Shown here one piece after another: positions 43,548 to 61,992 of a stretch of DNA of 64,000 nucleotides. A program made the translations under genes and the position numbers. The notes beneath the pieces are model-generated. The model saw nothing but the letters and a program-made list of their open reading frames with translations, was not told the origin of the DNA and made no database searches. Position 1 is the first letter of the stretch. Each line of letters begins with the position of its first letter. The stretch lies in IMG/VR virus record IMGVR_UViG_3300023296_000874, positions 124,001 through 188,000 of that record; one strand, written 5' to 3'.

Positions 43548-44047
43548 CAGTACTCCACTGTCTTAGACGGCGATTCGTACCGCAACCGGGCTTTCTCAAT
43601 CTCAACCTTCTTGCGGTTCAGATCGCGCCCGTCCGTTGCGAGGATCGGCTGGTTGTCTTCGCTCAGTCCGGCAAAGAGCCAGTCCTTGCCATTGCGGTCC
43701 CGCACTTGGTCGCCGTGCATCAGGACGCGCTTGCGAGGGTCCTCGTGCATCTCACCGAACACGGAGCGCATAGGCATCAGCCCGTACCGCTTGGGTCCGG
43801 AGAGTACAAGGCTCGGAGGGCTTCGTCGTCCTGCCACGGTTGCTCTCCTATCTCGGTGCTTCCACGCGGGCTCGAGGCGGCGGCTGAATGCTCGGAGCTC
43901 GTCCGCAAGCACGCTGCCTTCCTCTACACCGAAGCGAGGGTCCTCAAGGACGCTGATCGCCTGTCCGATGAGCTCGGCGGGGTGGAACTTGTTGAAGCTC
44001 TCACGGTTGAGAGCGGCAAGCCTCTGAATCTCAGTTGATACGGTCAT
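43547..44047 (-). CDS. Hypothetical late protein with STEIQRLAA N-terminus
   Basis: ATG 44047 overlaps the upstream stop (ATGA). Confidence 0.7.
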   Translation of the reverse strand: MTVSTEIQRLAALNRESFNKFHPAELIGQAISVLEDPRFGVEEGSVLADELRAFSRRLEPAWKHRDRRATVAGRRSPPSLVLSGPKRYGLMPMRSVFGEMHEDPRKRVLMHGDQVRDRNGKDWLFAGLSEDNQPILATDGRDLNRKKVEIEKARLRYESPSKTVEY

Positions 44048-46038
44048 TCTGCCCACCTCTGTCGCATACGGCGGGAAGCCGCGTCGGATTGGTCACGCTT
44101 GGCATCACTCATGGAGTGGCGCTTCAGCCAGGTTTCAGCGTTGTCGCGGGCTCCAATGATCTGGCCCCACGTCTGCTTCAGCTCAGCACGTAGCGGTGTG
44201 TCCACCCGGTAGATGCGGCGGTTCTTGGCAATCACCTGGAACCGCTTGATCAGGTCGTGGCTGCGGATCATTGCCCGGAGGTCCTTGAGGCCCTCACCGA
44301 ACTTCTTCGCGTCCTGATCTCGGGAGGCACTCATCATCCTTCCGATGATGCTGTCGTACTCGTTGGCTACCTGAGCCACCACGTACTCGCCCAAGTCCTG
44401 CATCGCCTGCCCATTGGCTACCAGCTTCTGCTCAGCCTTGTTGAGCGCGCCGTTGCGCTTCTTTGCCTGCACCTTCACAACCACTGCGTCACGGGCTTCC
44501 TGGTACTGAGCCAGTACCCCACGTCGGATCTTGAGGTGGTCGTCTGCACGCACTACACGGGCGAGCTTCTGAATCTGACTGGATGTTGTCACCTTGGTAC
44601 TCCCGAAGGCCTCAAAGGCTTTGTAAGCGAACCACCTCTGTAGGCGGGGGAGCGCGTAGGTGTCAAGAGTATCCCTGCCTACCCACTCGAATGCATCGTT
44701 CTCCCAGTCCAGTTCAACCTCACCTGTGAACTTTCGCGAGAGGAAGATGTGGACCGTGTCCTCACCGGGCGAGTTGGCTACGCCGAGTAGCTTGAGCTCC
44801 GTAGGCTTCAGCTTGGTCTCCTCGTAGGCTTCACGCTTGGCGGCTTGTGCGGGGCTCTCACCCTTTTCTACGCCGCCCACAACGAGGGTCCAACTGCCCG
44901 GCATCCATGGAGCCGTAATGCCGCGTCGTACAAGGAGGATCTTGTTGTCGCGCATGAAGCATACGCCTGCGGCCTTGTAGTCGTTCGTGGCTGCATTCTT
45001 GGGGGGTTCTTCAGGCACGGGGCAATCCTTGGGACGTCGGTCGGTGTTGTAGAAGTCGGTCCAGAACACCGAGATGATCGCGAACTCGTTCTTCCTTCGC
45101 CCGCCGCGAAGTACGATGGTCAGCCTGTCCTTGGGGTCTTCCCATACAAGCTTCCTGCCGTACTCCAACTCCTCAGTCACCCGCTTGCCTGCGGGAGTCT
45201 GCATGGACTTCTCACGGTTGAGCCACTTCTGCCAGTTCTTGATGCCGCTCCGGATGTCCTGCACGGTGATGCCGCGCTCATCCATTCGACGCTGGGTGTG
45301 CGGTGTGAGAACGAGCTTGCTGTTGTTCGGTCCGCGTTCAGCCAAGAGGTCATAGACGATCTGCTCGTCCTTGCCATCAAAGTCACGTCCGCCTTCCTCG
45401 ATCTCAGCGATGAGCTGGTCACGTACTCGGGGGTTGCGCACGTTGCGGTAGACGCGCTCAGCCAGGTAGCAAGGTCCAGCCTCGGTGGGCAGTCCCAGTG
45501 AAGGACTGAGGTCAGCCGTCCGGCTCTTGAATGGGAACCGATGTACCTTGCTCATGCCCCACACCTCAAGAACAGGAGAGAACGTCCCAGTCGGCTCGGG
45601 TCCTGTGTAGGGCGCGTCGCCGTCTGAGTAGGAAAGTGTCGCGTGTGGACGGTAGTTCGGGAACCTGTCCGAGATGTCGTAGCCAGCATCCATCAGCTCT
45701 CGCTTGACGGCTTTGCGCAGTGCGCCCATGTCGCGGCTGAAGGCGATGGGCATGTGGTGGATGCTCTGTCCGGAGGGGTTCTTGAACTCGTCCTTGGCTT
45801 GCAGCGTACAGATCACGTCACCGAAGCGTCGTACCTGTCGGGAAACCAGAGCGAGGAACTCCTGCTCACGTTCGGGTGGGACGTTGCCCACGATCAGGAA
45901 GGTGATGTGCGCCGGGGAACGGTCGTTCGGCAGCTTGGGAAACTGGTGGGCGAGCCAGATAGGCATCGGCATGAACAGCCCGACAGACGTATAGTCTCCG
46001 GTCTTGTTCCCGTCCAGTGGTGAGGCATTCTTGATCAT
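44044..46038 (-). CDS. Multidomain protein: 2H phosphoesterase + DUF4258-like domain + Nudix hydrolase + helical C-domain
   Basis: Two HxT motifs (AHITF, PHATL). LVLTPHTQRRMDERGITVQDI is DUF4258-like. Nudix box GGVEKGESPAQAAKREAYEET. Likely start ATG 46038. Confidence 0.8.
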   Translation of the reverse strand: MIKNASPLDGNKTGDYTSVGLFMPMPIWLAHQFPKLPNDRSPAHITFLIVGNVPPEREQEFLALVSRQVRRFGDVICTLQAKDEFKNPSGQSIHHMPIAFSRDMGALRKAVKRELMDAGYDISDRFPNYRPHATLSYSDGDAPYTGPEPTGTFSPVLEVWGMSKVHRFPFKSRTADLSPSLGLPTEAGPCYLAERVYRNVRNPRVRDQLIAEIEEGGRDFDGKDEQIVYDLLAERGPNNSKLVLTPHTQRRMDERGITVQDIRSGIKNWQKWLNREKSMQTPAGKRVTEELEYGRKLVWEDPKDRLTIVLRGGRRKNEFAIISVFWTDFYNTDRRPKDCPVPEEPPKNAATNDYKAAGVCFMRDNKILLVRRGITAPWMPGSWTLVVGGVEKGESPAQAAKREAYEETKLKPTELKLLGVANSPGEDTVHIFLSRKFTGEVELDWENDAFEWVGRDTLDTYALPRLQRWFAYKAFEAFGSTKVTTSSQIQKLARVVRADDHLKIRRGVLAQYQEARDAVVVKVQAKKRNGALNKAEQKLVANGQAMQDLGEYVVAQVANEYDSIIGRMMSASRDQDAKKFGEGLKDLRAMIRSHDLIKRFQVIAKNRRIYRVDTPLRAELKQTWGQIIGARDNAETWLKRHSMSDAKRDQSDAASRRMRQRWAE

Positions 46039-46039
46039 A

Positions 46040-46432
46040 TCAGTCCAATAGGTCCGCAAGCCACCCTTCCCGGTTGGCCTCGATGTCTTCCCTATTGGTC
46101 TCGGCCCGGCGTCGGATGCGCTCAAGTTCGTTGGTGGTCAACATCCAGATCTCGTTCAATCGTTCTTGAACGGCGACACCGAAATAGGAGATGTCAGAGC
46201 CGAAACGGCGCTGGCTGTTTTCCACTACTGATAGGACACCGCGACGTAGCGTCTGTGCAGTATCTTCGATGTTCGTAGAGGATCGGGTAGTGAACTTCAC
46301 CCGCTCGGTATCAGTCACCAACCAGTACTCCTCGAGACCGAAGTCCGACTGCACTTTGATGAACCAGTAATCGGTAGATGACCCGAAGCGTCGATCTATG
46401 TTCTGAACACGGCTGAGTTTGCCAAGTGACAT
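46040..46432 (-). CDS. Hypothetical protein with internal tandem duplication
   Basis: GGAGG before ATG 46432. Two copies of N..RRFGS...Y...VQ...E.W..T..E...R..TN.ED. Confidence 0.7.
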   Translation of the reverse strand: MSLGKLSRVQNIDRRFGSSTDYWFIKVQSDFGLEEYWLVTDTERVKFTTRSSTNIEDTAQTLRRGVLSVVENSQRRFGSDISYFGVAVQERLNEIWMLTTNELERIRRRAETNREDIEANREGWLADLLD

Positions 46433-46455
46433 CGCGTCCTCCATCAACCGCTTCA

Positions 46456-46470
46456 TACAAACGGAATATG
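46456..46470 (-). promoter_or_regulatory. Candidate late promoter motif, copy 5 (CATATTCCGTTTGTA)
   Basis: Consensus match at the very start of the minus-strand block. Confidence 0.7.
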
Positions 46471-46592
46471 AGTCCCACACTCACTCGCTGGGGCGGCGAC
46501 CTCGAAATAAGTGAGATACTCTCTAACTTCTAACCTCAGAGGGTCGTTAGAGGGACCTAAGCCCAACGATACCGGCCAAAGGAGCCCAGCGA

Positions 46593-47288
46593 ATGTTCAA
46601 ATCAATCCGTGACGCCCTCTTCGTTTCTGACGAAGGCGGGGCCGATACTCCCACGGCTGCTCCAACTTCGGACGTTGAAGCCCTTCTGGCGAACCTCCAC
46701 GGTTCGCCCGCTGCTGCCCCCAGCGGAACCATCACGCCTCCCACTCCCGCGCCGACCCCGGCTCCGGTTGCAGTGGTGGCGACTGGCGGGTGGGTAGAAG
46801 GACGTCCGTTCGAGGAGCTGTACGCTGAGGCCGGTGTGCCGGTTGGCAGCTACCCCGTGGAGCGCTTCCTTGCGGTTGCGGACGGGCTGAAGGCGATGGG
46901 ACCTCAGGTTGCCAAGCAGGCACTCGCCGCCATGGATGCGGGTGATGCCTCTTGGAGTGCCGCTGACGTACGCTCTGACCAGCAGGCCAAGCTCGGCGTG
47001 TTGGCGGGCATCGACGGACAGATGGACGCTCAGGTGACCTCTGCTACGGCGGCACGGGATGCTGCGGTGACTGCTGCGGATGAGACGGTGGCCGAGGCTA
47101 CCTCACTGCTCCGCGAGCAGATTGCAGAGCTCGAAGCCCAGATCACTTCCTTTGCGGAGGAGGCCGGAGCCGAGAAGGCCGGAGCCGAAGCCGCACTCGA
47201 AGCGACGACCGCATTGGCCGCTCGTGAGAAGGCTCGGGTGCTCAACGCAACCCTGCGCCTCACCGAAGCCTCGCAGTACCTCGACTGA
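46593..47288 (+). CDS. Ala-rich coiled-coil protein at head of ABC module
   Basis: 231 aa with AAGGAG RBS. Pro/Ala linker followed by a long coiled coil. Confidence 0.8.
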   Translation: MFKSIRDALFVSDEGGADTPTAAPTSDVEALLANLHGSPAAAPSGTITPPTPAPTPAPVAVVATGGWVEGRPFEELYAEAGVPVGSYPVERFLAVADGLKAMGPQVAKQALAAMDAGDASWSAADVRSDQQAKLGVLAGIDGQMDAQVTSATAARDAAVTAADETVAEATSLLREQIAELEAQITSFAEEAGAEKAGAEAALEATTALAAREKARVLNATLRLTEASQYLD

Positions 47289-47383
47289 ACACGAACCGCC
47301 TACACTTCGAACCTCAACACTTTGTTCATCTTGCTGCGACTCCCGTAGCATACCCGCCGAAAAGGCACCCTGGAGAATACGAC

Positions 47384-49066
47384 ATGGCCCTCACCCCACT
47401 CGCAAAGAACATCGTCAAGGGAGTTGGCGCGCTCGCCATCCTCGCCGTGACGTGCAGCGTTGGCTTCTACATCTACAGCAACTCCGGCGACGACCCGGCG
47501 ACCACGGTGGCCTCGGCTCCCGGTGAAGCGGCTCCCGCTCAGGCAGAGGATCGCGGCGTCTTCAGCGGCATCTTCGGGGGCGGTGGCAACAGCGGCCCGC
47601 TCGGCTCCGAGGGCAACCCCCTCACCGTGAGCATCGTGAGCTGGCACGGCTACGTTGGCGGGCTGACCGCGAACGGCGGCTTGACCACGCAGCCCGGCAG
47701 CATCAACGCCCGGAACGGCCTGTACGTGAAGTACATCCTCGACGACGGCATCCCGACGATGGCCGAGCGCTTCGAGCCGGGTGACGCGCAGTGCATGTGG
47801 CGCACCGTCGACTTCTGGGCTCAGGAGCAGCCTGCCCTCCGCAGCGTGGGGCTCGACGGCCGCATGGTGATGGTGGTGGACAACTCCCGAGGCGGTGATG
47901 CGATCATCGGACGCAAGGGCACCATCGAGAGTGTGGAAGACCTGGCCGGGAAGACGGTGGCGATCACCGAATTCACGCCCAGCCACATGCTCGGCCTCTA
48001 CGCGGTGGAGCAGAGCTCCCTCAGCGGACGCGCCAAGAGCAGCGTGAACTTCCGGGGCTTCCCCGACAACGCGACGGCACTCGCCGCCTTCCGCGCCGGA
48101 CAGGTTGACGCCCTCATCACCTGGGAGCCCGAGACCAGCATCGCCCTGACCACCGTGGACGGTGCGACCCCCGTGTTCACCACCGCCGAAGCCACCTCGC
48201 TGATCTACGACGGTATCGTGTGCAACACCCGCACCATCGAGACCCACCCCGACGTCATCCAGCGCTTCGTTGGCGGATGGATGGAGGGTGCCACGGCAGC
48301 CCGTGCGAACCCCGGTGCCGGTGCTGACGTGCTGACCGCCAACGAGCCGCTCTTCGCCGCCCTGGTTGCGGACAACGGACGCAACTTCCTGACCGACCGC
48401 GTGTTCGGCGGCATCGTGTGGAGCGACCTCGCGGACAACATCCGAGTGCTGGGCCTCGCCGGAAGCGGTGGCGACCAGATTGCCCGGATCTACAGCGAGA
48501 GCAACGACATCTGGCGGGCGAACACCAACCTGCTCGACGGCATGGCTCAGGTGAGCTCCGGTGACGCCTTCGACGACACCTTCATCCGCGCCCTGATGGA
48601 CACCGCACCCCAGGCTCGAACGGCTGCGGCAGCCCCCGAGTTCACCTTCACCTCCACCGAACGGGCGACCGTGGTGCAGACGGGTGGCTCGGCTCTGACC
48701 AAGCCCATCGCGATCAACTTCGCCACGGGACAGGCCACGCTGAACGCACGAGGCAAGGCGACCATCGAGGCTGAGCTCATCCCCCTGCTCGACGCTACGG
48801 CTGGAAGCTACGTGCGAGTGAGTGGCAACACGGACTCCACGGGTGGTGCGGCGCTCAACACCCGCCTCTCCGGACAGCGTGCCGGAGTGGTGAGCGAGTG
48901 GCTGCAGAGCGAGTGGGAGATTCCGGGTGACCGCCTCGAGGTGGTTGGCAACGGCGAGGACAACCCGATCTGTGACGAGAGCAACCCGACCGGCGACGGC
49001 TACGACGACCTCGAGACCTGCCGGGCGGCGAACCGCACGACCCGCTTCGAGATTCTCTCCCGCTGA
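47384..49066 (+). CDS. ABC substrate-binding protein (NMT1/SsuA/TauA-like) fused to C-terminal OmpA-like domain
   Basis: 560 aa. N-terminal TM anchor. PBP2-type DNSRGGDAII...DLAGKTVA...AFRAGQVDALITWEP. OmpA motifs INFATG, GNTDSTG...N.RLS.QRA and NRTT. Confidence 0.85.
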   Translation: MALTPLAKNIVKGVGALAILAVTCSVGFYIYSNSGDDPATTVASAPGEAAPAQAEDRGVFSGIFGGGGNSGPLGSEGNPLTVSIVSWHGYVGGLTANGGLTTQPGSINARNGLYVKYILDDGIPTMAERFEPGDAQCMWRTVDFWAQEQPALRSVGLDGRMVMVVDNSRGGDAIIGRKGTIESVEDLAGKTVAITEFTPSHMLGLYAVEQSSLSGRAKSSVNFRGFPDNATALAAFRAGQVDALITWEPETSIALTTVDGATPVFTTAEATSLIYDGIVCNTRTIETHPDVIQRFVGGWMEGATAARANPGAGADVLTANEPLFAALVADNGRNFLTDRVFGGIVWSDLADNIRVLGLAGSGGDQIARIYSESNDIWRANTNLLDGMAQVSSGDAFDDTFIRALMDTAPQARTAAAAPEFTFTSTERATVVQTGGSALTKPIAINFATGQATLNARGKATIEAELIPLLDATAGSYVRVSGNTDSTGGAALNTRLSGQRAGVVSEWLQSEWEIPGDRLEVVGNGEDNPICDESNPTGDGYDDLETCRAANRTTRFEILSR

Positions 49067-49099
49067 ACCCTTGCCGGGCGACCGGTACTTGAACCCAAG

Positions 49100-49135
49100 G
49101 CAGGGCCGAGGTGGCATACACCACCTCGGCCCTGC
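49100..49135 (+). promoter_or_regulatory. Perfect 15-bp intercistronic hairpin after the SBP gene
   Basis: gcagggccgaggtgg-cataca-ccacctcggccctgc, with no U-tract. Confidence 0.65.
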
Positions 49136-49150
49136 GCATAGGAGCCTGAG

Positions 49151-49933
49151 ATGAACCCGAACAAGAACATCACCCGCACCATGGGATACGCCCTCGGTGC
49201 CACCAGCATCCTGATGGTGCTGACCCTCTGGAGCGCGCTTGCGGGCTTCGACATGGTGAGCCCCGCCAAGCTCCCCGCACCCTGGAACGTAGCCTCTGCA
49301 TGGTGGGCACTCGCCTTCACCAAGGGACAGCTCGGGGGAGCGATCTTCGCCTCCGTAAGCCGCATCGGCATCGCAGCAGTGCTCATGATCCTCGTTGGCT
49401 TCCCCATGGGCATCCTGATGGGCTCAAGCAAGGCTGTGAATGCCTTCTTCAGCCCGCTCGTTGACCCCTTCCGCTCCGCGCCCATCGTGGCCGTGATCCC
49501 CATCCTCGTGATGTGGTTTGGCATCGGAGAGACGATGAAGGTGGTGTTCTTGTGGCTCGGTGCTGTGGTGTACCTTGTGCCTATGGTGCGAGATGCCATC
49601 CAGGCGGTTGACTCCCGGTGGTTCAAGGCAGCAAAGGACCGGGGCGCATCCGACACCGAAGCGTTGGTGTACGCCGTGCTGCCTATGGCGAAGCCGCGCA
49701 TCGCTGACGCACTCATCACCAGCATCAGCGTGATGTGGACCTACATCACGGTTGCGGAGCTCGTGAACGCTGACAGCGGCATCGGGAAGCTCATCGAGAC
49801 CTACCGAAAGGTGAGCCAGATGGACAGCGTCTTCGCAGGCATCCTGACCATCATGGTGCTGGCTCTGATCTCCTACACGGCGATGGTTGCCTTGCGGAAC
49901 AAGCTCTACCCGGACTACAAGTACGAAGCCTAA
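49151..49933 (+). CDS. ABC transporter permease (NitT/TauT type)
   Basis: 260 aa with about 6 TM segments, RSAPIVAVIPILVMWFGIGE, an EAA-like FKAAKDRGAS, and AELVNADSGIG. Confidence 0.9.
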   Translation: MNPNKNITRTMGYALGATSILMVLTLWSALAGFDMVSPAKLPAPWNVASAWWALAFTKGQLGGAIFASVSRIGIAAVLMILVGFPMGILMGSSKAVNAFFSPLVDPFRSAPIVAVIPILVMWFGIGETMKVVFLWLGAVVYLVPMVRDAIQAVDSRWFKAAKDRGASDTEALVYAVLPMAKPRIADALITSISVMWTYITVAELVNADSGIGKLIETYRKVSQMDSVFAGILTIMVLALISYTAMVALRNKLYPDYKYEA

Positions 49934-49973
49934 GTTCGATACTCTCTGACTTTCAACGGCTTCCACTCGTTAC

Positions 49974-50795
49974 ATGAGAACAGAGCCCAACCACGGGACA
50001 GGTGACATGATTCTGACACTCAACGACATTGTGCAGGAGTACCCCGACCCCTTGAACAAGGGTGCCGTGGTGAGGATTGCTGACGGCGTATGCCTCGAGT
50101 ACCCGGAGCCCAGCATCAACTTCATCATGGGACCCTCCGGCTGTGGCAAGACCACCCTGCTGAGGCTCATGGGAGGCGTGCGACCCTCCAACGTGGTGAC
50201 TCCTACCTCCGGTACGGTGACCATCGACGACAAGCCGTGCATCGGAATGCATCCTGACAGCGTGACCGTCTTCCAGCAGCTCGCCAACTACCCCTTCCTC
50301 ACCGTGGAGGAGAACATCCGCTTCGCCTTCAAGACCGGGGAGTGGGCCGCGCGGGTTGACGCCAAGGAGCAGGACGAGCGAGTGGAGTGGATCCTCGAAG
50401 CAGTGGGCCTCGCCGACCGGAGGGCCAACTACCCTTCGCAGTGCTCGGGTGGGCAGAACCAGCGGATTGCACTCGCCTCGGCGTTGGTGCTCAAGCCACG
50501 CATCCTCCTCATGGACGAGCCCTTCCGTGGCCTCGACCCCAACACCCTGCGCGAAGTGCAGGAACTGCTGGTGCGTATCTGGACCGAGATCCAGTGCCTG
50601 GTGGTGTTTGTTGGACATGACGTTGAAGAGGCGCTCCTGATTGCGGACCGTGTGACAGTGCTGACAACCAAGCCTGCCACCGTCGCTAAGGAGTTCCACA
50701 TCGCAACTCCACGCTCCATGCGGAGCGAGGACTGGCTGGAAACCACGCCGACGCGTGCAACCGAACGTGAGATTCTGCGCTTGATGCGCGGCTGA
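49974..50795 (+). CDS. ABC transporter ATP-binding protein (NitT/TauT type)
   Basis: Walker A GPSGCGKTT, Q-loop VFQQ, signature CSGGQ, Walker B LLMDEP, H-loop GHD. Confidence 0.92.
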   Translation: MRTEPNHGTGDMILTLNDIVQEYPDPLNKGAVVRIADGVCLEYPEPSINFIMGPSGCGKTTLLRLMGGVRPSNVVTPTSGTVTIDDKPCIGMHPDSVTVFQQLANYPFLTVEENIRFAFKTGEWAARVDAKEQDERVEWILEAVGLADRRANYPSQCSGGQNQRIALASALVLKPRILLMDEPFRGLDPNTLREVQELLVRIWTEIQCLVVFVGHDVEEALLIADRVTVLTTKPATVAKEFHIATPRSMRSEDWLETTPTRATEREILRLMRG

Positions 50796-50843
50796 TTTAG
50801 AGAGGGCTTCGATGACTACTATCCCCACAAGAGAGGGAACACG

Positions 50844-51752
50844 ATGAGCCGCTACGACCCCAAAGATGGCGACGTCTCCTACCTGCTTGAGATGCTCGCG
50901 CATCCCGCCAACATCGTCACCGCGAGTGTGGCGGGTTTGGCAGGAGCAGCTTTGCTCGTGACTGCCGGACCACTCGCTGCGGCGCTCCCCTTTGTCGCCC
51001 TTGTTGGTGGGGAGGGCATTGCAGCCCTCTTCGTGCCCAGCAGCGTGGTGTTCAAGGAGTTCGTGAACCGTGGCAAGCGGAGCGACGCTCGGGACAAGGA
51101 GCGCGAGCGTTTGCTCGAAGAGCTCAACAGCCGAGTGCAGGTGTACCGCCACCCTACCGATGAGTGGGGACAGCGACGCGAGGACCGCCGCCCAAGCTCA
51201 GGGCACCTCGACCGGTACAACCGGATTCGGGAGCGCGTGGAGCGCTTCTACGAGCTCAGTGCTGAGGGAGGATCCGCCCTCACCTACACGGATGCGGAGC
51301 GGCTTGACGACCTCAGCGTCGACTTCCTGCGACTGTGGCTCGTGACCTACACGCTTCACGAGCGTGGACAGAGCATCGACGTGGGCGACCTCACGAAGCG
51401 GGTGCGAAGCCTGAACGAGCAGATCAAGGACGCCAATGTGCTGGAGCAGCGCAAGCTCGCCTCGGCCCGAGATGGACTCCAGAAGGTGCTCGACCGGCGC
51501 TCAAGCTTCTCCTCTCAGCGGGACTCTGCCGAGGCCCGGATGCTGACCATGGCGGACGGCATCGAAGAGATGTACTCCCGCACGTTGGCGAGCCCCGGTG
51601 AAGCCAGCAGCTTCCTCGACGACCAGCTCGGACGGCTGGAAGTGGAGGAACGCCTCGGCGCAGAGTTGGACATCGAGCTCGCGGAGATGGGCCTCGGCAA
51701 GACGCTCCACCGCGACCCCCGGATGGATCTGCTCATGGACGGCAACTCGTGA
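50844..51752 (+). CDS. Two-TM membrane protein with long helical/coiled-coil tail (XpaC-like architecture)
   Basis: 302 aa. TM hairpin at residues ~20-65, then coiled coil. Ends in RMDLLMDGNS. Confidence 0.65.
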   Translation: MSRYDPKDGDVSYLLEMLAHPANIVTASVAGLAGAALLVTAGPLAAALPFVALVGGEGIAALFVPSSVVFKEFVNRGKRSDARDKERERLLEELNSRVQVYRHPTDEWGQRREDRRPSSGHLDRYNRIRERVERFYELSAEGGSALTYTDAERLDDLSVDFLRLWLVTYTLHERGQSIDVGDLTKRVRSLNEQIKDANVLEQRKLASARDGLQKVLDRRSSFSSQRDSAEARMLTMADGIEEMYSRTLASPGEASSFLDDQLGRLEVEERLGAELDIELAEMGLGKTLHRDPRMDLLMDGNS

Positions 51753-51910
51753 GCGGTTTCGAACTGTGCATCGTGGCCGGAATAGTGTGGTACGGAGCTG
51801 TAGCCGCACACGGCCTCCGCGTGTACCGCATTGCTCGGGAGGACGGCCGCTCCTACTCTTTCACATGGAACGTCCTCACCGGACCTTCCGTCATCTACCA
51901 GGATTGAACC

Positions 51911-52807
51911 ATGCCCCAGATCACCGTTGACGACCTCCAGACCCGATACGACTTCCCCTCCTGCGACGGGCGCGTCAAGGACACCATCGAAGCGGCTATG
52001 GACGCCGGACCTGCAAGCTTCCTGCGCTTCCTCTATCGGTACGCGGAGTGGAATGGCTTCTTCGGCTCCGGCGTTGCGACGTTGGCGGGCAAGGTGGGGC
52101 GCTCCCGTGGGCTCTTCATGGACCCCGAGGAGACGATCACTCCGCTCGCTGACCGTGGTGTGCTCGTTGCCGCCTACGTGTTCAACGCGGCACGGGACGA
52201 GTTCGACGACAGCGGCACCGAGGCCCTCGACACTCACCGCTGCCTCGCACAGGCCATGCTCAAGGGCTCCGTTGAGTACCTGACGCCAGGTTCCTTCGTG
52301 ACCCGCGCTGAGGATGGCACGGCGGTTCAGGCTCCCTTCGGCTGGGCCGACGGTGAGTTGGACGAGCTGCTCGACATCCCGATCTGGCTGCAGGGCCTCT
52401 GCGATCAGGTGGCTGTGGGGTACGGGAACGGCTCGCCGGACGACCGACCCAGCATCTTCCGCGCCATGGGCTACCACATGGGCTCTGAGGTGCTCGCCGC
52501 CAAGGAGTTCACGCAGATCGACATGAGCTTCCGCGCCCGGATGATGGACATGGTGGAGTACCTCGAGCGCAACGAGGTGACCTTCAACAGCCAGAGCTAC
52601 CAGTGCTACTACTGGATCCGCATTCACAGTGACCTCGGTGGCGCTGTTGAGAGCGCTCACTTCGAGGATGCGCTCCGCGCCATCCGCTACGCCCTCGGCT
52701 TCGTGCCGGAGGAGGACCGGGACGCCCTGCGGTACCAGGCTCTGCTGGGATTTGACGACTTCGCCGCCGACCATGCGGGCTTCTTCCGCATGGTGAACAC
52801 AGCCTGA
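51911..52807 (+). CDS. Heme-oxygenase-like diiron oxidase (HDO/CADD-like) superfamily protein
   Basis: 298 aa, helical. Ligand-like motifs RDEF...DTH, GSEVLA and WIRIH...VESAH. Confidence 0.6.
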   Translation: MPQITVDDLQTRYDFPSCDGRVKDTIEAAMDAGPASFLRFLYRYAEWNGFFGSGVATLAGKVGRSRGLFMDPEETITPLADRGVLVAAYVFNAARDEFDDSGTEALDTHRCLAQAMLKGSVEYLTPGSFVTRAEDGTAVQAPFGWADGELDELLDIPIWLQGLCDQVAVGYGNGSPDDRPSIFRAMGYHMGSEVLAAKEFTQIDMSFRARMMDMVEYLERNEVTFNSQSYQCYYWIRIHSDLGGAVESAHFEDALRAIRYALGFVPEEDRDALRYQALLGFDDFAADHAGFFRMVNTA

Positions 52808-52816
52808 GAGGACCCC

Positions 52817-53266
52817 ATGATCATCAAGCCTGATATCTGCGAGCTCCTGCCCATCGGCTTCCGGCTGAGGTTGCAAGGTGGCGAGACCAAGCCTCAGCGA
52901 GACCAAGCCCTCAAGGCGGGTCTCGCGCACGCCAGGGGGCAGGGAGAGTTTCCGCTCGACCTGACCACGACGGCGATGGTTTGGTACAAGAAGGACCAGC
53001 ACAACGCGCGCTCGTGCAAGTACATCCTGCTTGCCCACCAGGGCGGCGTGAAGTGGGTGATGACCATCGCCCATGTGCATCAGCGCAAGACCGGAGTGAT
53101 TGGTGCGGAGCTACGCGCCTTCCACCCCCAGGAAGTACCCTGCCGACGGAAGCAGATCCCCTCCAGTGCCGTCCCCGTGGATGTGATGGATGCCGTGGGC
53201 CTGATCTTCAACATCATCAAGCCGACCGCAGCAGAAGCGCGGATGGACATCCTCTTCGACGATTAG
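52817..53266 (+). CDS. Hypothetical protein ending RMDILFDD
   Basis: 149 aa with GAGG RBS. Confidence 0.75.
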   Translation: MIIKPDICELLPIGFRLRLQGGETKPQRDQALKAGLAHARGQGEFPLDLTTTAMVWYKKDQHNARSCKYILLAHQGGVKWVMTIAHVHQRKTGVIGAELRAFHPQEVPCRRKQIPSSAVPVDVMDAVGLIFNIIKPTAAEARMDILFDD

Positions 53267-53274
53267 GAAGTGAC

Positions 53275-53550
53275 ATGGACATCCTCGTAGTGACCCTGAC
53301 CGAAGCCGGACACGAGGTCTTCAGTGCAAGCCCCGGCGAGCAGTTCTTGGCGGTGGGCTGGAACGGCACCACCTTCGAGAGTCTGCTGGACATCAAGACT
53401 CACAAGCTCCGTGCGGGCACCGTGGGAGCAGCTCGCGTCAATGTGGTGGGAAGGCTGGTTGAGATCCCTGCCACTCGGGAAGAAGTAGGACTGCCTCCAC
53501 TCCCTGAGCCCAAGCTGAAGGGTCGGATGGGTATCCTGTTCGACGATTAG
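53275..53550 (+). CDS. Hypothetical protein ending RMGILFDD
   Basis: 91 aa from ATG 53275 (AGGA RBS). Confidence 0.7.
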   Translation: MDILVVTLTEAGHEVFSASPGEQFLAVGWNGTTFESLLDIKTHKLRAGTVGAARVNVVGRLVEIPATREEVGLPPLPEPKLKGRMGILFDD

Positions 53551-53601
53551 CCTCTGAGTTCTGAGTGCCTCACCTCGTTATCCCTATGTAACGGAGGCAC
53601 C

Positions 53602-53958
53602 ATGAAGCTCGCAGAACTCAAAGCCGCAGCCCACGCACTGACCAATGTGGAAGCACACCTCGGAAGAGGCTGGGACTACATCGGTAGTGCCGGTGGATCT
53701 GAGTACACCTTCGGACTCGACCTTGAGGCCGACGGTGGAGAGTTCCCTGAGGCTCCCGGTGGCAAGTTTGAGCTCGTGCGTGCCAACGGCATCGTGAGTG
53801 CTTGGACCATCCGTTGGTACGCGGAAGGCGAGCACCTGTACACCGAATACGAGGGACGTGGCGACTCCCCCACCAAAGCCTACTACAGCCTCCTCTACAC
53901 CTTCGAAGACTCCGACAGCGCAGAGCTCAACGCATGGGCCGCTGCGGCTGACGAGTAG
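53602..53958 (+). CDS. Hypothetical protein
   Basis: 118 aa with GGAGG RBS. Confidence 0.75.
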   Translation: MKLAELKAAAHALTNVEAHLGRGWDYIGSAGGSEYTFGLDLEADGGEFPEAPGGKFELVRANGIVSAWTIRWYAEGEHLYTEYEGRGDSPTKAYYSLLYTFEDSDSAELNAWAAAADE

Positions 53959-53981
53959 ACCATCCACCAGTAGGAAAGGGA

Positions 53982-54500
53982 ATGCCCTCAGACGACAAGT
54001 GTACCAAACAGAACCACAACCTCTCCCTCTCTATGGAAGGGCTCCTGATGATGGCTCGAATGCTCCGCGCACTCGGGTTCACCGGGAAGGAATGGAGAGC
54101 CTCCAACGTCAGCCTGGACCGTGCCTTCTCAACTGAGAAGTTGAGCCGATCATGCAACGCGAAAGCGCTCGAACATGACAAGGAAGGACGGTACCCACGT
54201 CCCGTGACGCTCGACCTACGTGTTCTCTACCAAGAGAGCCGCAAGGAAGCCTCTGAAGGCATCACGGTCTCCTGGTTTTTCTCCTGCACAGTGTGGGGTC
54301 AGGATCTTTCGGGCGGTGCCCGTCTACCCAAGGTGGTAGTTCCTCTCGACGCTGATGTTGCCACGGCTGACATGATCATCCTGAAGGGCGCGCAAGCTGC
54401 CTACGCTGATCTCCTCGGAGCGATCCAGAAGAAGACAGCCAAGATGCTGAGTGACGCTGGAGGTGAGCTCTCCTACGAAGCCTCCCCTGAAGTTGAGTAG
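53982..54500 (+). CDS. Hypothetical protein
   Basis: 172 aa; the start may be at a downstream ATG. Confidence 0.65.
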   Translation: MPSDDKCTKQNHNLSLSMEGLLMMARMLRALGFTGKEWRASNVSLDRAFSTEKLSRSCNAKALEHDKEGRYPRPVTLDLRVLYQESRKEASEGITVSWFFSCTVWGQDLSGGARLPKVVVPLDADVATADMIILKGAQAAYADLLGAIQKKTAKMLSDAGGELSYEASPEVE

Positions 54501-55069: not shown

Positions 55070-56005
55070 ATGGCCCGCTGGATTGGACGGAACGTACTCA
55101 GCATCGACGACATAGACCAAGAGGACATCGTTGAGCTGTTCAAGAGGGCGGACGGCCTTCAGGGTGCCTGGCCTCACGTCTTTGAGACCTTGAAGTTCGC
55201 TCGGGTGACCAACCTGTTCTACGAGCCAAGCACCCGGACCGCCAAGAGCTTCGAGGCCGCTGCTCAGATGCTCGGTGCTGACGTGCTGAACATCACGGAG
55301 CCCGCCTACTCTTCAATCAGTAAGGGCGAGAGCCTGGAGGACACGGTCCGCACGCTTGCCTGCTACAGCAACCTCATCGTACTGAGGCACCCCGACGTCG
55401 GCGCGGCGGCACGAGCGGCTAAGGTGGCCGGGGTACCTGTGGTGAACGCCGGAGACGGGGTTGGAGAGCACCCGACACAAGCACTCCTGGACTTGTACTG
55501 CATCTACAGGGAGCTCGGCACCTTGGATGGCCTCACCGTTGGGCTTGTTGGTGATCTGAAGCACGGACGCACCGTCCACTCTCTTGCGAAGCTGCTCTCC
55601 AGATACGACACCAAGTTCGTGCTCGTGAGTCCTCCCGCAATGGGAATGCCTGAGGGCTACTGCGAAGGTGAGTGCATGACCCTTGAGGAAGCCGTGCCGC
55701 AGGTGGACGTCCTCTACGTCACCCGCGTCCAGAAGGAACGCCTCAGTGCTGAAGACCTCACCGCCCACGGGTTGAGCGGTGGTTACGTCATCACCCCTGA
55801 GACCATGAGCCGTGCGAAGGCTTCGATGGCTCTGATGCATCCCTTCCCCCGCGTCGGTGAGATCCTCCCTTCAGTGGACAGCGATCCTCGCGCCGCGTAC
55901 TTCAGGCAGATTGAGGGAGGCTTGTGGGTTCGCGCCGCTTTGCTATCCTTGGTGCTCGGATCGGTCAACCAAGAAGGCTACCTGCCTCTCGCGAAGAACC
56001 GATAG
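55070..56005 (+). CDS. pyrB: Aspartate carbamoyltransferase catalytic subunit
   Basis: FYEPSTRT, KGESLEDT, RHP, NAGDGVGEHPTQALLD, GDLKHGRTVHS, YVTRVQKER, MHPFPR. Confidence 0.95.
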   Translation: MARWIGRNVLSIDDIDQEDIVELFKRADGLQGAWPHVFETLKFARVTNLFYEPSTRTAKSFEAAAQMLGADVLNITEPAYSSISKGESLEDTVRTLACYSNLIVLRHPDVGAAARAAKVAGVPVVNAGDGVGEHPTQALLDLYCIYRELGTLDGLTVGLVGDLKHGRTVHSLAKLLSRYDTKFVLVSPPAMGMPEGYCEGECMTLEEAVPQVDVLYVTRVQKERLSAEDLTAHGLSGGYVITPETMSRAKASMALMHPFPRVGEILPSVDSDPRAAYFRQIEGGLWVRAALLSLVLGSVNQEGYLPLAKNR

Positions 56006-56047
56006 AAACCGTCTGAGTTTCCCACCCCTCGGCTCGTTGTACGGGTA

Positions 56048-56614
56048 ATGGAGGCAGACAGCATGTTCGGATCGACACTTCAGATGGTGCGCCACCCCGA
56101 CCCCCGACTGGAGCAGGTTTCTGCAACAGTTGAAGAGGGTGAGTTTGGTGCCGACATGCTGACCCGCGCCCAGGCCATGAACCACCTCCGCAAGATCGAG
56201 GGCGGCATTGGTATCGCGGGTGTGCAGGTTGGCGACATGCGCCGCATCCTGCTCGCGGTTGTGGGTGAGAAGCCCGCACATCAGGCCAGCCGCGACGCTA
56301 CCTTCTTCGCGAACCCCGTGATCACCGCTCATGGTGACACCGTACCCTCCGGCTTCAAGGAGGGATGCCTCAGCTACCCCAAGCTCAAGGTGAACATCCA
56401 CCGCTACGCCTGGATCGTGCTTGAGTGGCGCGACTTTGACGGCAGCCAGCACACCCGCCGCTTTGAGGGGATGGACGCCATCGTGCTTCAGCACGAGATG
56501 GACCACCTTGACGGCAAGACCCTTCTTCAGCAGGCCTCATCGACGGCGAAGCGCAAGTTCGCTACCGGAAAGCTCCCACGCCCCAAGAAGACGCGTAGAA
56601 GCTCCCGCCGCTAA
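56048..56614 (+). CDS. def: Peptide deformylase
   Basis: GIGIAGVQVG, EGCLS and QHEMDHLDG motifs, with a basic C-terminal tail. Confidence 0.95.
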   Translation: MEADSMFGSTLQMVRHPDPRLEQVSATVEEGEFGADMLTRAQAMNHLRKIEGGIGIAGVQVGDMRRILLAVVGEKPAHQASRDATFFANPVITAHGDTVPSGFKEGCLSYPKLKVNIHRYAWIVLEWRDFDGSQHTRRFEGMDAIVLQHEMDHLDGKTLLQQASSTAKRKFATGKLPRPKKTRRSSRR

Positions 56615-56738
56615 GTAGCCGACAACTCGGCACTTTCATGAAAGTTTAGTTCGTATTGCGATTTACTCTGAGTATCTCGCGGATGGTTTCGTTTTCCTTA
56701 TGTAACCCCCAAGGGGAAGTACAGAAGGAACCAAAACC

Positions 56739-57737
56739 ATGCGACTCTATCCCGCCCTCATGATTGCCCTACTCACCCTCACCGTGGGCTGTATGCCCGC
56801 ACAGGGGATCCTCGAAATCGAAGAGGACCCCACCGAAGACTGCTGCCCTGACGAAGATGACGACGTTGTGGTGGACGATGACGACGACTCCGGCGACACC
56901 GGTGATGACGACGACAGCGCCTGCGTTGACTGCGGCGACGATGATGACCACGGCGACAGCGACGTGGACAACGACGAGGACGGATACTTCGACGACGTTG
57001 ACTGCAACGACTACGACGACACCGTGTACCCCGGCGCGGAGGAGACTCCCTACGATGGCATCGACAGCAACTGCAACGGCCTCGAGGACGACTACGACTT
57101 CGACGGTGACGGCGAGGTGGCCCTGGGCTACGGCGGCGCGGACTGCAATGACCTGGATGCGGACGTGAACCCCGACGCGGACGAGGTTTGGTACGACGGC
57201 GTCGACCAGAACTGCGACGGGTGGAGCGACTACGACCAGGACGGCGATGGCTTCGACAGCGAGAGCTACGGCGGCGATGACTGCAACGACATCAACGGCG
57301 TGATCTTCCCCGACGCTCCTGACGTGTGGGACGGAGTGGACAGCGATTGTGATGGAGACGCTGACTACCTGGAGATGGAGGTGGCTGCACCCACCACCGT
57401 AGCCTCTACCACGACCATCGAGATTGAGGACGGCGACCCCAGCGGCCACTTCATCGAAATGTGGAACACCGTGATCGACGAAGAGGGTGGCGTTGACGAG
57501 AGCTACTACGGCTACTACGAGGTGGACGTGGACGGTACCTGCCTGAGCCTCTTGGCGGGTGACGAAGGCTGCGGGACGATGGCATCAGCAGGCGACCTCC
57601 TGATGACCTGGCTTGCTACGAACAGCACCCTGATCCTCTGGAACAGCACGGAGACCGAGTGCGTGGCCTGGGGAGCGTACCTCGACCTCCACGACGCGGC
57701 TGGACTCTGTACCGTGATCTCCCCCGACGCCCTGTAG
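56739..57737 (+). CDS. Acidic lipoprotein with three MopE-related putative metal-binding repeats
   Basis: Lipobox LTVGC, poly-Asp linker, then three copies of D.DGDG...DCND....P.A.E..YDG.D.NCDG. Confidence 0.85.
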   Translation: MRLYPALMIALLTLTVGCMPAQGILEIEEDPTEDCCPDEDDDVVVDDDDDSGDTGDDDDSACVDCGDDDDHGDSDVDNDEDGYFDDVDCNDYDDTVYPGAEETPYDGIDSNCNGLEDDYDFDGDGEVALGYGGADCNDLDADVNPDADEVWYDGVDQNCDGWSDYDQDGDGFDSESYGGDDCNDINGVIFPDAPDVWDGVDSDCDGDADYLEMEVAAPTTVASTTTIEIEDGDPSGHFIEMWNTVIDEEGGVDESYYGYYEVDVDGTCLSLLAGDEGCGTMASAGDLLMTWLATNSTLILWNSTETECVAWGAYLDLHDAAGLCTVISPDAL

Positions 57738-60435: not shown

Positions 60436-60453
60436 TCTCCTGAGTTGATGCGG

Positions 60454-61936: not shown

Positions 61937-61992
61937 AGCTGATCTCACCGTTTCTTGACTTGACCCTGAACCCCTTGACCCGGAGCGCACAA

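What the first reader, a model, noticed from the sequence alone, without database searches (positions are those of the whole stretch)
46593..51752. Phage-borne complete ABC importer with a peptidoglycan-tethered binding protein and two coiled-coil partners
Seen: a five-gene unit of coiled-coil protein, TM-anchored SsuA/NMT1-like SBP fused to an OmpA-like domain, permease, ATPase and a 2-TM coiled-coil protein. Established: OmpA-like C-domains bind peptidoglycan, and NitT/TauT systems import small anions or pyrimidine/thiamine precursors. Phages more often carry lone binding proteins such as pstS than whole importers. Inference: this is either nutrient scavenging for the infected cell (pyrB is nearby) or an envelope-stress/sensing machine in which the SBP bridges the inner membrane and cell wall.
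Basis: partly seen in the sequence, partly recalled or inferred. Interest (0 to 1): 0.75.

Follow-up and report, generated by a model that had tools for sequence, protein, structure and literature searches.

The report
Phage copy of PspA-linked tethered ABC operon
A 257-kb salt-lake phage carries an intact six-gene copy of a conserved bacterial operon, a wall-tethered ABC transporter with two helical partner proteins, which in bacteria and other huge phages is linked to PspA membrane-repair proteins, so it more likely looks after the infected cell's envelope than gathers nutrients.

Summary
Five + strand genes lie exactly at the stated coordinates, and a sixth gene (F, 51911-52807) belongs to the same unit.

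The contig is viral on both sides. The cassette sits at the same genomic position in independently assembled related phages, so it is not an assembly chimera.

All six genes are collinear homologues (31-56% identity) of a chromosomal operon found in Gamma- and Betaproteobacteria, Myxococcota and Geobacter. There C, D and E accompany B in 52 of 52 loci with enough flank, and A in 46 of 52. The operon usually continues into PspA/IM30 and an AAA+ ATPase.

Two further deep clades of the binding protein were seen only in huge phages, including Bacillus phage G and Lak phages. They keep the transporter and an A-like protein, but have a membrane-anchored PspA-like protein where E would be.

The conserved partnership is therefore with PspA/ESCRT-III-type membrane machinery, not with metabolism. 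The nearby pyrB is incidental.

Ravi et al. 2024 described the bacterial operon computationally. Yuan and Chen 2026 noted ABC transporters next to phage pspA genes. This window is a PspA-less member. Ligand, transport direction and protein contacts remain unknown. Interest is moderate.

The parts
46481..46592 (+). Divergent intergenic region at the strand switch, upstream of gene A. AGGAG ribosome-binding site at 46580-46584.
   Evidence: Sequence read directly. The - strand ORF ends at 46480 and A starts at 46593. No sigma-70-like promoter was found by the simple scan.
46593..47288 (+). A: soluble 231-aa partner protein. It has a short N-terminal motif, a Pro/Ala-rich linker, a conserved helical domain (about residues 70-140, with E90, G98, L99, D115, W121, D129 and K133 invariant) and a C-terminal coiled-coil-like helix. 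The family is unnamed.
   Evidence: No Pfam, NCBIfam, PHROG or PDB match. 31% identical to the gene upstream of B in Agrilutibacter and 39% to the one in phage contig L004. Alignment A5. hhalign links it to the A-like proteins of the other two phage module types: Prob 85%, E 6e-6, and Prob 90%, E 1.4e-6, which includes phage G gp246.
47384..49066 (+). B: inner-membrane-anchored substrate-binding protein of the SsuA/TauA/NMT1 class (about residues 78-420), fused to a C-terminal OmpA-like peptidoglycan-binding domain (446-537).
   Evidence: Pfam and NCBIfam. phrog_25518 matches nearly full length, E 3.6e-47. TM segment at 10-28. D484 and R499 are conserved in 126 and 134 of 134 homologues. The nearest solved binding proteins are SsuA, TauA and an entry titled nitrate transport protein (3e4r), all weak and partial. 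More than 700 homologues, mostly bacterial, at 42-50% identity.
49151..49933 (+). C: TauC/SsuC-like ABC importer permease.
   Evidence: BPD_transp_1 E 2.5e-23. TauC E 3.7e-37 but below the equivalog cut-off. 54% identical to the Agrilutibacter orthologue. EAA-type loop at residue 165.
49974..50795 (+). D: ABC ATPase with all catalytic motifs intact.
   Evidence: ABC_tran E 8.8e-25. Motifs located. 56% identical to the bacterial orthologue.
50844..51752 (+). E: 2-TM hairpin followed by a cytoplasmic all-helical bundle. The family is unnamed and always follows D.
   Evidence: AlphaFold2 model with pLDDT 85.7 and pTM 0.76. Present in 52 of 52 bacterial loci with enough flank. 359 cluster representatives match at E <= 0.001. 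The 55 relatives listed carry no Pfam domain, and ten divergent representatives gave none above threshold. No detectable PspA or Snf7 relationship. No meaningful structural match. Only weak resemblance to XpaC-like 2-TM proteins.
51911..52807 (+). F: accessory enzyme with a heme-oxygenase-like fold, probably metal-dependent.
   Evidence: 47% identical to the gene after E in Agrilutibacter. Model with pLDDT 91.8. Best PDB matches are the diiron enzymes HamA, PolF, UndA and CADD, and TenA homologues, at TM about 0.5. D96, E97, H109, H189, E193, E199, H239, E247 and H250 are invariant in 27 sequences. Present in 20 of 52 bacterial loci, in viral contigs L087, L088 and L093 and in phage-like contig L139.

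Best explanation
Window 46593-52807 is a six-gene cassette, A-B-C-D-E-F. It is a jumbo phage's inherited copy of a conserved bacterial operon.

Shown:
- The gene products are a soluble helical protein (A), an inner-membrane-anchored SsuA/TauA-class binding protein whose C-terminal OmpA-like domain keeps the peptidoglycan-binding Asp and Arg (B), a TauC-like permease (C), an intact ABC ATPase (D), a 2-TM protein with a cytoplasmic helical bundle (E) and a heme-oxygenase-like, probably diiron, enzyme (F).
- The conserved genomic partner of this transporter is PspA/IM30-type membrane machinery. In Beta- and Gammaproteobacteria the operon continues into PspA and an AAA+ ATPase.
- In two phage-only clades, which include Bacillus phage G and Lak phages, an A-like protein and a membrane-anchored PspA-like protein sit beside B, C and D.

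Inferred:
- The cassette acts on the envelope of the infected cell rather than as a nutrient-scavenging gene set.
- B spans the gap between inner membrane and cell wall and binds a small periplasmic solute.
- C and D move that solute, or respond to it, at the cost of ATP.
- A and E couple the transporter to the cytoplasmic face of the membrane. They do this either by recruiting the host's PspA or by doing a PspA-like job themselves. E occupies the slot that a TM-anchored PspA-like protein holds in the other modules.
- F modifies the solute or a related small molecule.
- The benefit to a large, slow-replicating phage would be to keep membrane integrity and energisation until lysis.

The ligand, the direction of transport and all protein contacts are unknown.
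For: Collinear homology of all six genes with the Agrilutibacter solisilvae chromosome: 31, 47, 54, 56, 31 and 47% identity.

Census of 52 bacterial loci with enough flank: C, D and E in 52, A in 46, PspA in 42, AAA+ in 42, F in 20. All six Myxococcota loci lack PspA and AAA+, like the window.

Phage type-ii modules run C, D, A-like, 1TM-PspA, B. 27 of 29 proteins in the PspA alignment A4 (17 bacterial operon PspAs, 12 phage ones) match PF04012.

Phage type-i modules run A-like, 2TM PspA-like, B, C, D. hhalign against PspA gives Prob 73%, E 3e-5. Two of six members hit PF04012 at E 2e-7 to 5e-6.

The A-like domain is homologous across all three module types.

The cassette is intact: ATPase motifs, EAA loop, PG-binding residues and F's invariant His/Glu set.

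It is stably inherited. It has the same flanks on both sides in related phage L004 at 33-71% protein identity. Another phage-like contig, L139, carries A-F at 24-44% identity.

Prior computational descriptions exist. PMC11237479, section 18 and Table S3, describes the bacterial operon. Preprint 10.64898/2026.10.24.761521 reports ABC transporters next to 15 pspA genes of huge phages.
Against: - No PspA/IM30 gene is detectable in the 257-kb contig, which is 81% complete. Its only AAA+ ORF matches just the generic ATPase core and lies about 90 kb away. The PspA link here is therefore by homology of the cassette, not by local context.
- E shows no detectable sequence or fold relationship to PspA or Snf7.
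- The A-E complex prediction gave no answer.
- Nothing excludes that the transporter simply imports a nutrient. Its parts are those of a classical type I importer, and F could be a catabolic enzyme.
- The N-terminal amphipathic helix is clear in bacterial A proteins but not significant in the window's A.
- No expression data were obtained.
Confidence: 0.5

Rival explanations
1. The cassette is a nutrient-scavenging auxiliary metabolic module. It imports a small anion or precursor (sulfonate or taurine, nitrate or bicarbonate, or a pyrimidine or thiamine precursor) for the infected cell. F processes the imported compound. The OmpA-like domain merely keeps the binding protein near the permease.
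For: All parts of a type I importer are present and intact. The SBP is nearest to SsuA, TauA and the nitrate-transport-protein entry 3e4r. F has the fold of TenA and of diiron oxidases that act on small molecules. Nucleotide-metabolism genes lie nearby: pyrB-like at 55070-56005 and a nucleoside deoxyribosyltransferase-like gene at 61089-61571.
Against: - No component reaches any NCBIfam equivalog cut-off, so no substrate is assigned.
- The transporter is always accompanied by the non-metabolic partners A and E, and usually by PspA and AAA+.
- In the two phage-only clades its neighbour is a membrane-anchored PspA-like protein.
- pyrB is absent from the related phage L004 that carries the cassette.
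- F is optional, present in 20 of 52 bacterial loci.
- A wall tether, a membrane anchor and a conserved cytoplasmic tail on B are not features of ordinary nutrient binding proteins.
Confidence: 0.25
2. The cassette alters the envelope to exclude other phages or to control the timing of lysis. Tethering the inner membrane to peptidoglycan and changing periplasmic solute content would block incoming phage DNA or resist lysis from without.
For: It is a membrane- and wall-associated module kept by many huge phages of unrelated hosts, namely Bacillus, Prevotella and probable Proteobacteria or Myxococcota. It starts a + strand block right after a NUDIX/2H-phosphoesterase gene that may be a counter-defence gene.
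Against: The same operon is chromosomal and widespread in free-living bacteria, next to ribosomal protein genes in Agrilutibacter. That points to a housekeeping envelope role rather than a phage-conflict role. There are no meaningful PADLOC matches: only generic ABC-ATPase similarity for D and one marginal MotB-type hit for B. There is no direct evidence for exclusion.
Confidence: 0.1
3. The cassette is an assembly artefact or a host fragment. On this reading it is bacterial DNA joined to phage DNA by mis-assembly, or the host flank of a prophage.
For: The cassette's GC content is 62-64%, against 57-60% for most of the window. Its closest named relatives are bacterial.
Against: - Logan contigs from two runs (12.7 and 12.4 kb) cross the upstream junction and run about 6.9 kb further into phage genes. 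Depth is even at 38x and 36x, with no joints or loose ends.
- A third sample holds a SNP variant of the same arrangement.
- Both flanks are syntenic with an independently assembled related phage from other environments.
- Phage structural genes lie upstream, and genes shared with related phage contigs lie downstream.
Confidence: 0.02

Closest known systems
[quoted passage not shown] 2024, mSystems, PMC11237479, section 18 and Table S3; example OGG56892.1)
   Same: Same transporter triad with the same SBP-OmpA fusion, and a membrane-anchored helical protein directly after the ATPase. In most Gamma- and Betaproteobacterial homologues of the window's cassette, PspA_IM30 and an AAA+ ATPase follow.
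   Different: The window, and the whole 257-kb contig, have no PspA and no operon-type AAA+. The protein after the ATPase (E) is not detectably Snf7 or PspA here. The paper does not describe the A family or F. That description is computational only, and no function has been tested.
PspA-adjacent complete ABC transporters in huge phages (Yuan and Chen, bioRxiv 10.64898/2026.10.24.761521, 2026); for example Bacillus phage G gp243, gp245, gp246, gp247, gp249 and gp250
   Same: The hosts are phages with very large genomes. The binding protein, permease and ATPase are homologous at 28, 30 and 32% identity to phage G. The A-like partner is homologous (gp246 family; hhalign Prob 90%).
   Different: Gene order differs (C, D, A-like, 1TM-PspA, B). 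Those modules contain a true PspA with an N-terminal TM segment where the window has E. Their B proteins form a separate deep clade. The preprint found its cases by searching for pspA, so PspA-less cassettes like this one would not have been counted.
NitT/TauT-family ABC importers (SsuABC, TauABC, NrtABCD, ThiXYZ)
   Same: SsuA/NMT1-class binding domain, TauC-like permease and an NrtC/TauB-like ATPase.
   Different: All matches fall below the equivalog cut-offs. The binding protein is membrane-anchored and fused to an OmpA-like domain. The transporter has obligate non-transport partners A and E. No substrate can be assigned.
Phage-borne lone binding proteins such as cyanophage PstS (from general knowledge, not tested here)
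   Same: A phage-encoded periplasmic binding protein of an ABC system.
   Different: Here the whole transporter and its partner proteins are carried. The genomic associations point to membrane maintenance rather than nutrient uptake.

Membership tests
Type I ABC importer, NitT/TauT family | Permease of the BPD_transp_1 type with an EAA loop | tested here: met
   PF00528 E 2.5e-23; TauC-like E 3.7e-37. EAA-type loop GASDTEALVYAVLP at residue 165.
Type I ABC importer, NitT/TauT family | ABC ATPase with Walker A, signature, Walker B and H-loop | tested here: met
   GPSGCGKT at 53, CSGGQ at 157, ILLMDE at 177, VGHD at 213. PF00005 E 8.8e-25.
Type I ABC importer, NitT/TauT family | Cognate binding protein of the SsuA/TauA/NMT1 class | tested here: met
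   NMT1 E 1.6e-7 (above the Pfam cut-off). SsuA_fam E 2e-22 over residues 154-319 only. Nearest PDB entries are SsuA, TauA and 3e4r.
Type I ABC importer, NitT/TauT family | Assignable substrate (equivalog-level match to a characterised system) | tested here: not met
   Every NCBIfam match for B, C and D is far below its curated cut-off, for example TauC at 128 bits against 342.
Type I ABC importer, NitT/TauT family | Demonstrated solute import | not testable with these tools
   Needs ligand binding and transport assays.
OmpA-like peptidoglycan-binding domain (PF00691) | Domain match above the gathering threshold | tested here: met
   E 1.3e-12, 48.3 bits against a cut-off of 27.2, residues 446-537. 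Many solved OmpA-like domains match at E 1e-18 to 1e-11.
OmpA-like peptidoglycan-binding domain (PF00691) | Conserved Asp and Arg of the NTD...LS..RA motif. That these residues contact diaminopimelate in Pal/OmpA-type domains is taken from general knowledge. | tested here: met
   Window D484 and R499 are present. D is conserved in 126 of 134 homologues and R in 134 of 134.
Psp-type envelope stress system (PspA-associated operon of Ravi et al. 2024) | A PspA/IM30 (PF04012) gene in the operon or genome | tested here: not met
   No PF04012 match in the 257-kb record at E <= 0.1, and the record is 81% complete. Bacterial homologues of the cassette have one in 42 of 52 loci.
Psp-type envelope stress system (PspA-associated operon of Ravi et al. 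2024) | Double AAA+ ATPase (inactive plus active domain) next to PspA | tested here: not met
   The only AAA+ ORF (528 aa, about 90 kb away) matches the operon AAA+ profile over positions 297-450 only, which is the generic ATPase core.
Psp-type envelope stress system (PspA-associated operon of Ravi et al. 2024) | Membrane-anchored divergent Snf7/PspA-like protein after the ABC ATPase | tested here: inconclusive
   E has the right position and a TM anchor. However, hhalign against PspA gives Prob 0.6% and against the phage TM-PspA-like family 2%. No Snf7 or PspA Pfam hit appears in 30 members. No ESCRT-III structural match was found, though helical folds are often missed.
Psp-type envelope stress system (PspA-associated operon of Ravi et al. 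2024) | SBP-OmpA fusion, permease and ABC ATPase in one operon | tested here: met
Heme-oxygenase-like diiron oxidases/oxygenases (for F) | Heme-oxygenase-like helical fold | tested here: met
   Model pLDDT 91.8. Foldseek probability 1.00 to HamA, PolF, UndA, CADD and TenA homologues, at TM 0.4-0.57.
Heme-oxygenase-like diiron oxidases/oxygenases (for F) | Three His and three or more carboxylates forming the dimetal site | tested here: inconclusive
   H109, H189, H239, H250, E97, E193, E199 and E247 are invariant in 27 sequences. Their positions were not superposed on a solved site.

The most novel reading that the evidence does not exclude
The transporter may not be a nutrient importer at all. 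It could be the engine or sensor of an ancient five-part envelope-maintenance machine, made of an A-like protein, a membrane-anchored helical or PspA-like protein, a wall-tethered binding protein, a permease and an ATPase. The machine would be shared by bacteria and by huge phages of both Gram-positive and Gram-negative hosts. B would report the state of the periplasm, or the distance between inner membrane and wall. ATP hydrolysis would drive or gate the assembly of PspA-type polymers on the inner leaflet. E would be a non-homologous replacement for the TM-anchored PspA.
Probability: 0.2. Interest if true: 0.8.

Novelty: new member of a known kind. Interest (0 to 1): 0.5.

Why it matters
No one has tested what PspA-linked ABC transporters with a wall-tethered binding protein do. 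The operon is known only from comparative genomics.

Huge phages of unrelated hosts keep the module. It occurs in three deep variants that all retain the A-like partner and a membrane-anchored helical protein. This points to a single functional machine, and to envelope upkeep being under selection during long infections by large phages.

Two culturable systems make the question testable:
- Bacillus phage G, genes gp243-gp250.
- Panacagrimonas perspica DSM 26377, which carries the full operon.

The analysis also defines two unnamed protein families (A and E) and an optional diiron-type enzyme (F) as parts of the system.

Tried and rejected
- Megablast of the cassette against GenBank phages found nothing.
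- The search for related loci with the single B protein found nothing in viral contigs. The B alignment was needed.
- My first iterative HMM for A drifted, because an ORF that my caller fused across A and B entered the profile. A counts were therefore restricted to ORFs that end just upstream of B.
- E as ESCRT-III, Snf7 or PspA was not supported. This was tested by hhalign, a Pfam scan of 30 members, a PDB profile search, Foldseek against PDB, VIA-align wide (helical noise only, Z <= 10) and Pfam on ten divergent family members (one weak XpaC hit).
- A as PspA: hhalign Prob 0.4%. The PDB profile search returned only coiled-coil noise.
- The A-E complex prediction scored 0.00. The tool gives no answer, so it is evidence neither way.
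- The Atlas lead linking E to Rv2743c/PspM was not confirmed by Pfam.
- PADLOC found no defence-system membership.
- The N-terminal amphipathic helix of A is significant in bacterial members (muH 0.75-0.78, 1 of 500 shuffles as high). It is not significant in the window's A or in phage G gp246.
- The promoter and terminator scans showed nothing above chance.
- The chimeric-assembly hypothesis was rejected.
- The pyrB connection was rejected.

Full report
**1. What is in the sequence**

- A (46593-47288, 231 aa) has no match in Pfam, NCBIfam or PHROGs.
- B (47384-49066, 560 aa) has one N-terminal hydrophobic segment at residues 10-28. It has an NMT1/SsuA-class binding domain and a C-terminal OmpA-like domain.
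- C (49151-49933) is a TauC-like BPD_transp_1 permease with an EAA-type loop.
- D (49974-50795) is an ABC ATPase with intact Walker A, signature, Walker B and H-loop motifs.
- E (50844-51752, 302 aa) has two hydrophobic segments at 24-42 and 46-64. The AlphaFold2 model (pLDDT 85.7, pTM 0.76) shows a TM hairpin followed by a compact all-helical cytoplasmic domain.

An AGGAG lies 8 nt before A's ATG. A is the first gene after a strand switch.

**2. The unit has six genes and is a copy of a bacterial operon**

B has more than 700 homologues, mostly bacterial, at 42-50% identity over the full length. NCBI labels several of them 'phosphate ABC transporter substrate-binding/OmpA family protein'.

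In the complete chromosome of Agrilutibacter solisilvae, the B homologue lies in a run of genes just downstream of the ribosomal-protein/rpoA cluster. All six consecutive window ORFs, A to F, are collinear homologues of that run, at 31, 47, 54, 56, 31 and 47% identity. F is 51911-52807. The bacterial operon then continues with a PspA_IM30 protein, a 608-aa AAA+ ATPase and a small TerB-like protein.

I fetched 80 bacterial loci with an alignment of B and assigned their ORFs with iterated HMMs. Among the 52 loci with enough flanking DNA:

| Gene | Loci with it (of 52) |
|---|---|
| C, D, E | 52 |
| A | 46 |
| PspA | 42 |
| AAA+ | 42 |
| F | 20 |
| TerB-like | 20 |

All Gamma- and Betaproteobacterial loci have PspA and AAA+. 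All six Myxococcota loci lack them and so look like the window.

It clearly fails.

**3. The contig is a phage and the cassette belongs to it**

- The window is part of a 257,533-bp IMG/VR virus record, 81% complete by CheckV.
- Tail sheath, baseplate-hub and tape-measure genes lie upstream.
- The DNA comes from salt-lake metagenomes.
- Logan contigs from two runs (12.7 and 12.4 kb) span from about 6.9 kb upstream of the cassette through E or into F. Depth is flat at 38x and 36x, with no joints or loose ends. A third sample carries a SNP variant of the same arrangement.
- Related phage contigs from other samples, one labelled groundwater (L004-L006; B 58% identical), carry A-B-C-D-E at the same place. 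They have homologous flanks on both sides. Upstream these are a 451-aa protein at 71% identity, two further ORFs and a NUDIX gene. Downstream they are a 149-aa ORF, peptide deformylase, a MopE-motif protein and an 821-aa VWA protein at 56% identity.
- A third phage-like contig (L139) has A-F at 24-44% identity, with two small genes inserted between B and C.

The cassette is therefore old and stably inherited in this phage group. Chimerism is rejected. The junction at about 52.8 kb was not covered by the single read-laying run. It rests on synteny.

**4. The module in other huge phages**

tblastn of B against GenBank phages hits only very large genomes:

- Bacillus phage G (497 kb, gp249 and gp250)
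- Lak phages of Prevotella (about 540 kb)
- two 735-kb uncultured phages

B also matches phrog_25518 over nearly its full length. A scan of IMG/VR with the B alignment returned 50 loci, mostly from contigs over 100 kb.

A maximum-likelihood tree of 86 B sequences shows three deep clades:

- a phage-only clade (type i)
- a second phage-only clade that includes phage G (type ii)
- a clade of all 58 sampled bacteria, with the window and L004 as a pair at its base and three other viral contigs nested among Myxococcota

The bacterial sampling was limited to the 80 best matches. Bacterial sisters of the two phage clades may therefore exist.

Gene orders differ between the types:

| Module type | Gene order | Evidence |
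|---|---|---|
| Type ii (includes phage G) | C, D, an approximately 185-aa protein, a PspA with an N-terminal TM segment, B | 27 of 29 proteins in PspA alignment A4 (17 bacterial, 12 phage) match PF04012; |
| Type i | an approximately 220-aa protein, a 2-TM protein of about 340 aa, B, C, D | |

In type ii, phage G gp247 is the TM-anchored PspA.

The type-i 2-TM protein is PspA-like. hhalign against the PspA alignment gives Prob 73%, E 3e-5 over PspA positions 8-132. Two of six members hit PF04012 at E 2e-7 and 5e-6, below the gathering score.

The approximately 220-aa and 185-aa proteins are homologous to A through its central conserved domain. This includes phage G gp246. hhalign gives Prob 85% (E 6e-6), Prob 90% (E 1.4e-6) and, between the two phage families, 80%.

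The invariant core across all three clades is thus an A-like protein, a membrane-anchored helical protein (E or a TM-PspA-like protein), the wall-tethered binding protein, the permease and the ATPase.

**5. What the parts are**

*B.* The OmpA-like domain keeps the Asp and Arg of the NTD...LS..RA motif. D484 is conserved in 126 of 134 homologues and R499 in 134 of 134. From general knowledge of Pal/OmpA-type domains, these residues contact the peptide stem of peptidoglycan. The binding domain is nearest to SsuA, TauA and the nitrate-transport-protein entry 3e4r, but only weakly and partially. No component reaches an equivalog cut-off, so the ligand is unknown. Many polar residues of the binding domain are invariant even between the window and phage G, which argues for a real, conserved ligand. 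The short cytoplasmic tail of B carries a conserved (K/R)-L-T-P-x-A-K motif. I infer that this is a contact site for a cytoplasmic partner.

*A.* It has a short N-terminal motif, a Pro/Ala-rich linker, a conserved helical domain and a long C-terminal helix. The N-terminal motif is strongly amphipathic in bacterial members but not significantly so in the window's A. A is not detectably related to PspA.

*E.* It belongs to a discrete family. 359 cluster representatives match at E <= 0.001. The 55 relatives listed carry no Pfam domain, and ten divergent representatives gave none above threshold. Ravi et al. call the protein in this position a membrane-anchored divergent Snf7. I could not reproduce that for the window's family by profile-profile comparison, Pfam, PDB profile search, Foldseek or VIA-align. 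Helical folds are hard for these tools, so the result is inconclusive rather than negative. Weak leads point to XpaC-like 2-TM proteins.

*F.* It has a confident heme-oxygenase-like fold (pLDDT 91.8). Its best solved matches are diiron enzymes (HamA, PolF, UndA, CADD) and TenA homologues. Four His and four Glu, plus an Asp, are invariant in 27 sequences. It is probably a metal-dependent enzyme. I did not superpose the residues on a solved site.

**6. How it most likely works**

Shown: the cassette is an intact, inherited homologue of an operon whose constant genomic partner is PspA/IM30-type membrane machinery. That partnership has been kept in three deeply diverged versions with different gene orders.

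Inferred: in the infected cell the cassette serves envelope or inner-membrane maintenance or sensing, rather than nutrient supply.

- B bridges the inner membrane and the wall and binds a periplasmic solute.
- C and D transport it or signal its presence.
- A and E link the transporter to the inner leaflet. They may recruit host PspA, since the contig has none. Alternatively they substitute for it, since E sits where the other modules have a TM-PspA-like protein.
- F acts on the solute.

I put this at 0.5. The nutrient-scavenging reading gets 0.25. It is not excluded, because the transporter is a classical importer and F could be catabolic. An exclusion or lysis-timing role gets 0.1, and artefact 0.02. 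The A-E complex prediction gave no answer.

**7. Comparison with what is known, and novelty**

- The bacterial operon was noted by comparative genomics in Ravi et al. 2024 (PMC11237479, section 18, Table S3). They suggested a link between membrane remodelling and solute transport.
- Yuan and Chen (bioRxiv, October 2026) reported complete ABC transporters next to 15 pspA genes in huge phages.
- The window is a PspA-less phage member of this kind, of the form also found in Myxococcota.

I rate it a new member of a known kind. As far as I could find, the following are new:

- the A family as a universal partner
- the E versus TM-PspA alternation
- F as an optional enzyme
- the three-clade structure of B

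No experiment on any member was found in the searched literature. Interest is 0.5. The system is uncharacterised and testable in phage G and in cultured bacteria, but its existence is not surprising given those two papers.

Noticed in passing
window 44044-46125 (- strand): A 693-aa fusion protein. It combines an N-terminal 2H phosphoesterase (2_5_RNA_ligase2 E 9e-7; weak Acb1 anti-CBASS hit E 9.5e-4), a weak DUF4258 match and a NUDIX domain (E 1.4e-18). It is a candidate nucleotide-signal-degrading or counter-defence enzyme. Only the NUDIX part is shared with phage L004.
   Followed up: no
window 37350-38399 (- strand): An actin-like protein of the Volactin family (PF25216, E 1.7e-64; weak MreB match) encoded by the jumbo phage. 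Volactin genes are also called on the related phage contigs L004 and L139.
   Followed up: partly
window 55070-62301: The + strand block after the cassette holds five recognisable genes:
- an aspartate/ornithine carbamoyltransferase (pyrB-like, 55070-56005)
- a peptide deformylase (56048-56614)
- a MopE copper-motif protein (56739-57737)
- an 821-aa VWA protein (57970-60435)
- a nucleoside 2-deoxyribosyltransferase-like protein (61089-61571)

The pyrB-like gene is missing from related phage L004.
   Followed up: partly
window 28336-31920 (- strand): The tail sheath ORF is 1194 aa, but the sheath match (phrog_2839) covers only residues 846-1191. About 845 N-terminal residues have no match. The ORF starts at TTG, so the true start may lie further in.
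   Followed up: no
L001 5803-7380 and 7452-9008 (Bacillus phage G gp249, gp250): Phage G has two tandem paralogues of the SBP-OmpA protein. Both have Asn or Ala in place of the peptidoglycan-binding Asp (window D484), while keeping the Arg.
   Followed up: no
window 47384-47410 (B residues 1-9): The short cytoplasmic tail of B carries a (K/R)-L-T-P-x-A-K motif. It is conserved in roughly 96-120 of 134 homologues from bacteria and phages, which suggests a docking site for a cytoplasmic partner.
   Followed up: no
window 46000-54000: GC content is 62-64% across the cassette, against 57-60% in most of the window. The AT skew changes sign at the strand switch near 46.5 kb.
   Followed up: no
L139 4439-5213: In a third phage-like contig that carries A-F, two small unknown genes (126 and 128 aa, no Pfam match) are inserted between B and the permease.
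   Followed up: no
G000 contig 1, 81-83 kb (L137 1075-2661, - strand): A 528-aa ORF with a single classical AAA domain at residues 285-410 and an unmatched N-terminal half. It matches the operon AAA+ profile only over the ATPase core, so it was not counted as part of the system.
   Followed up: partly
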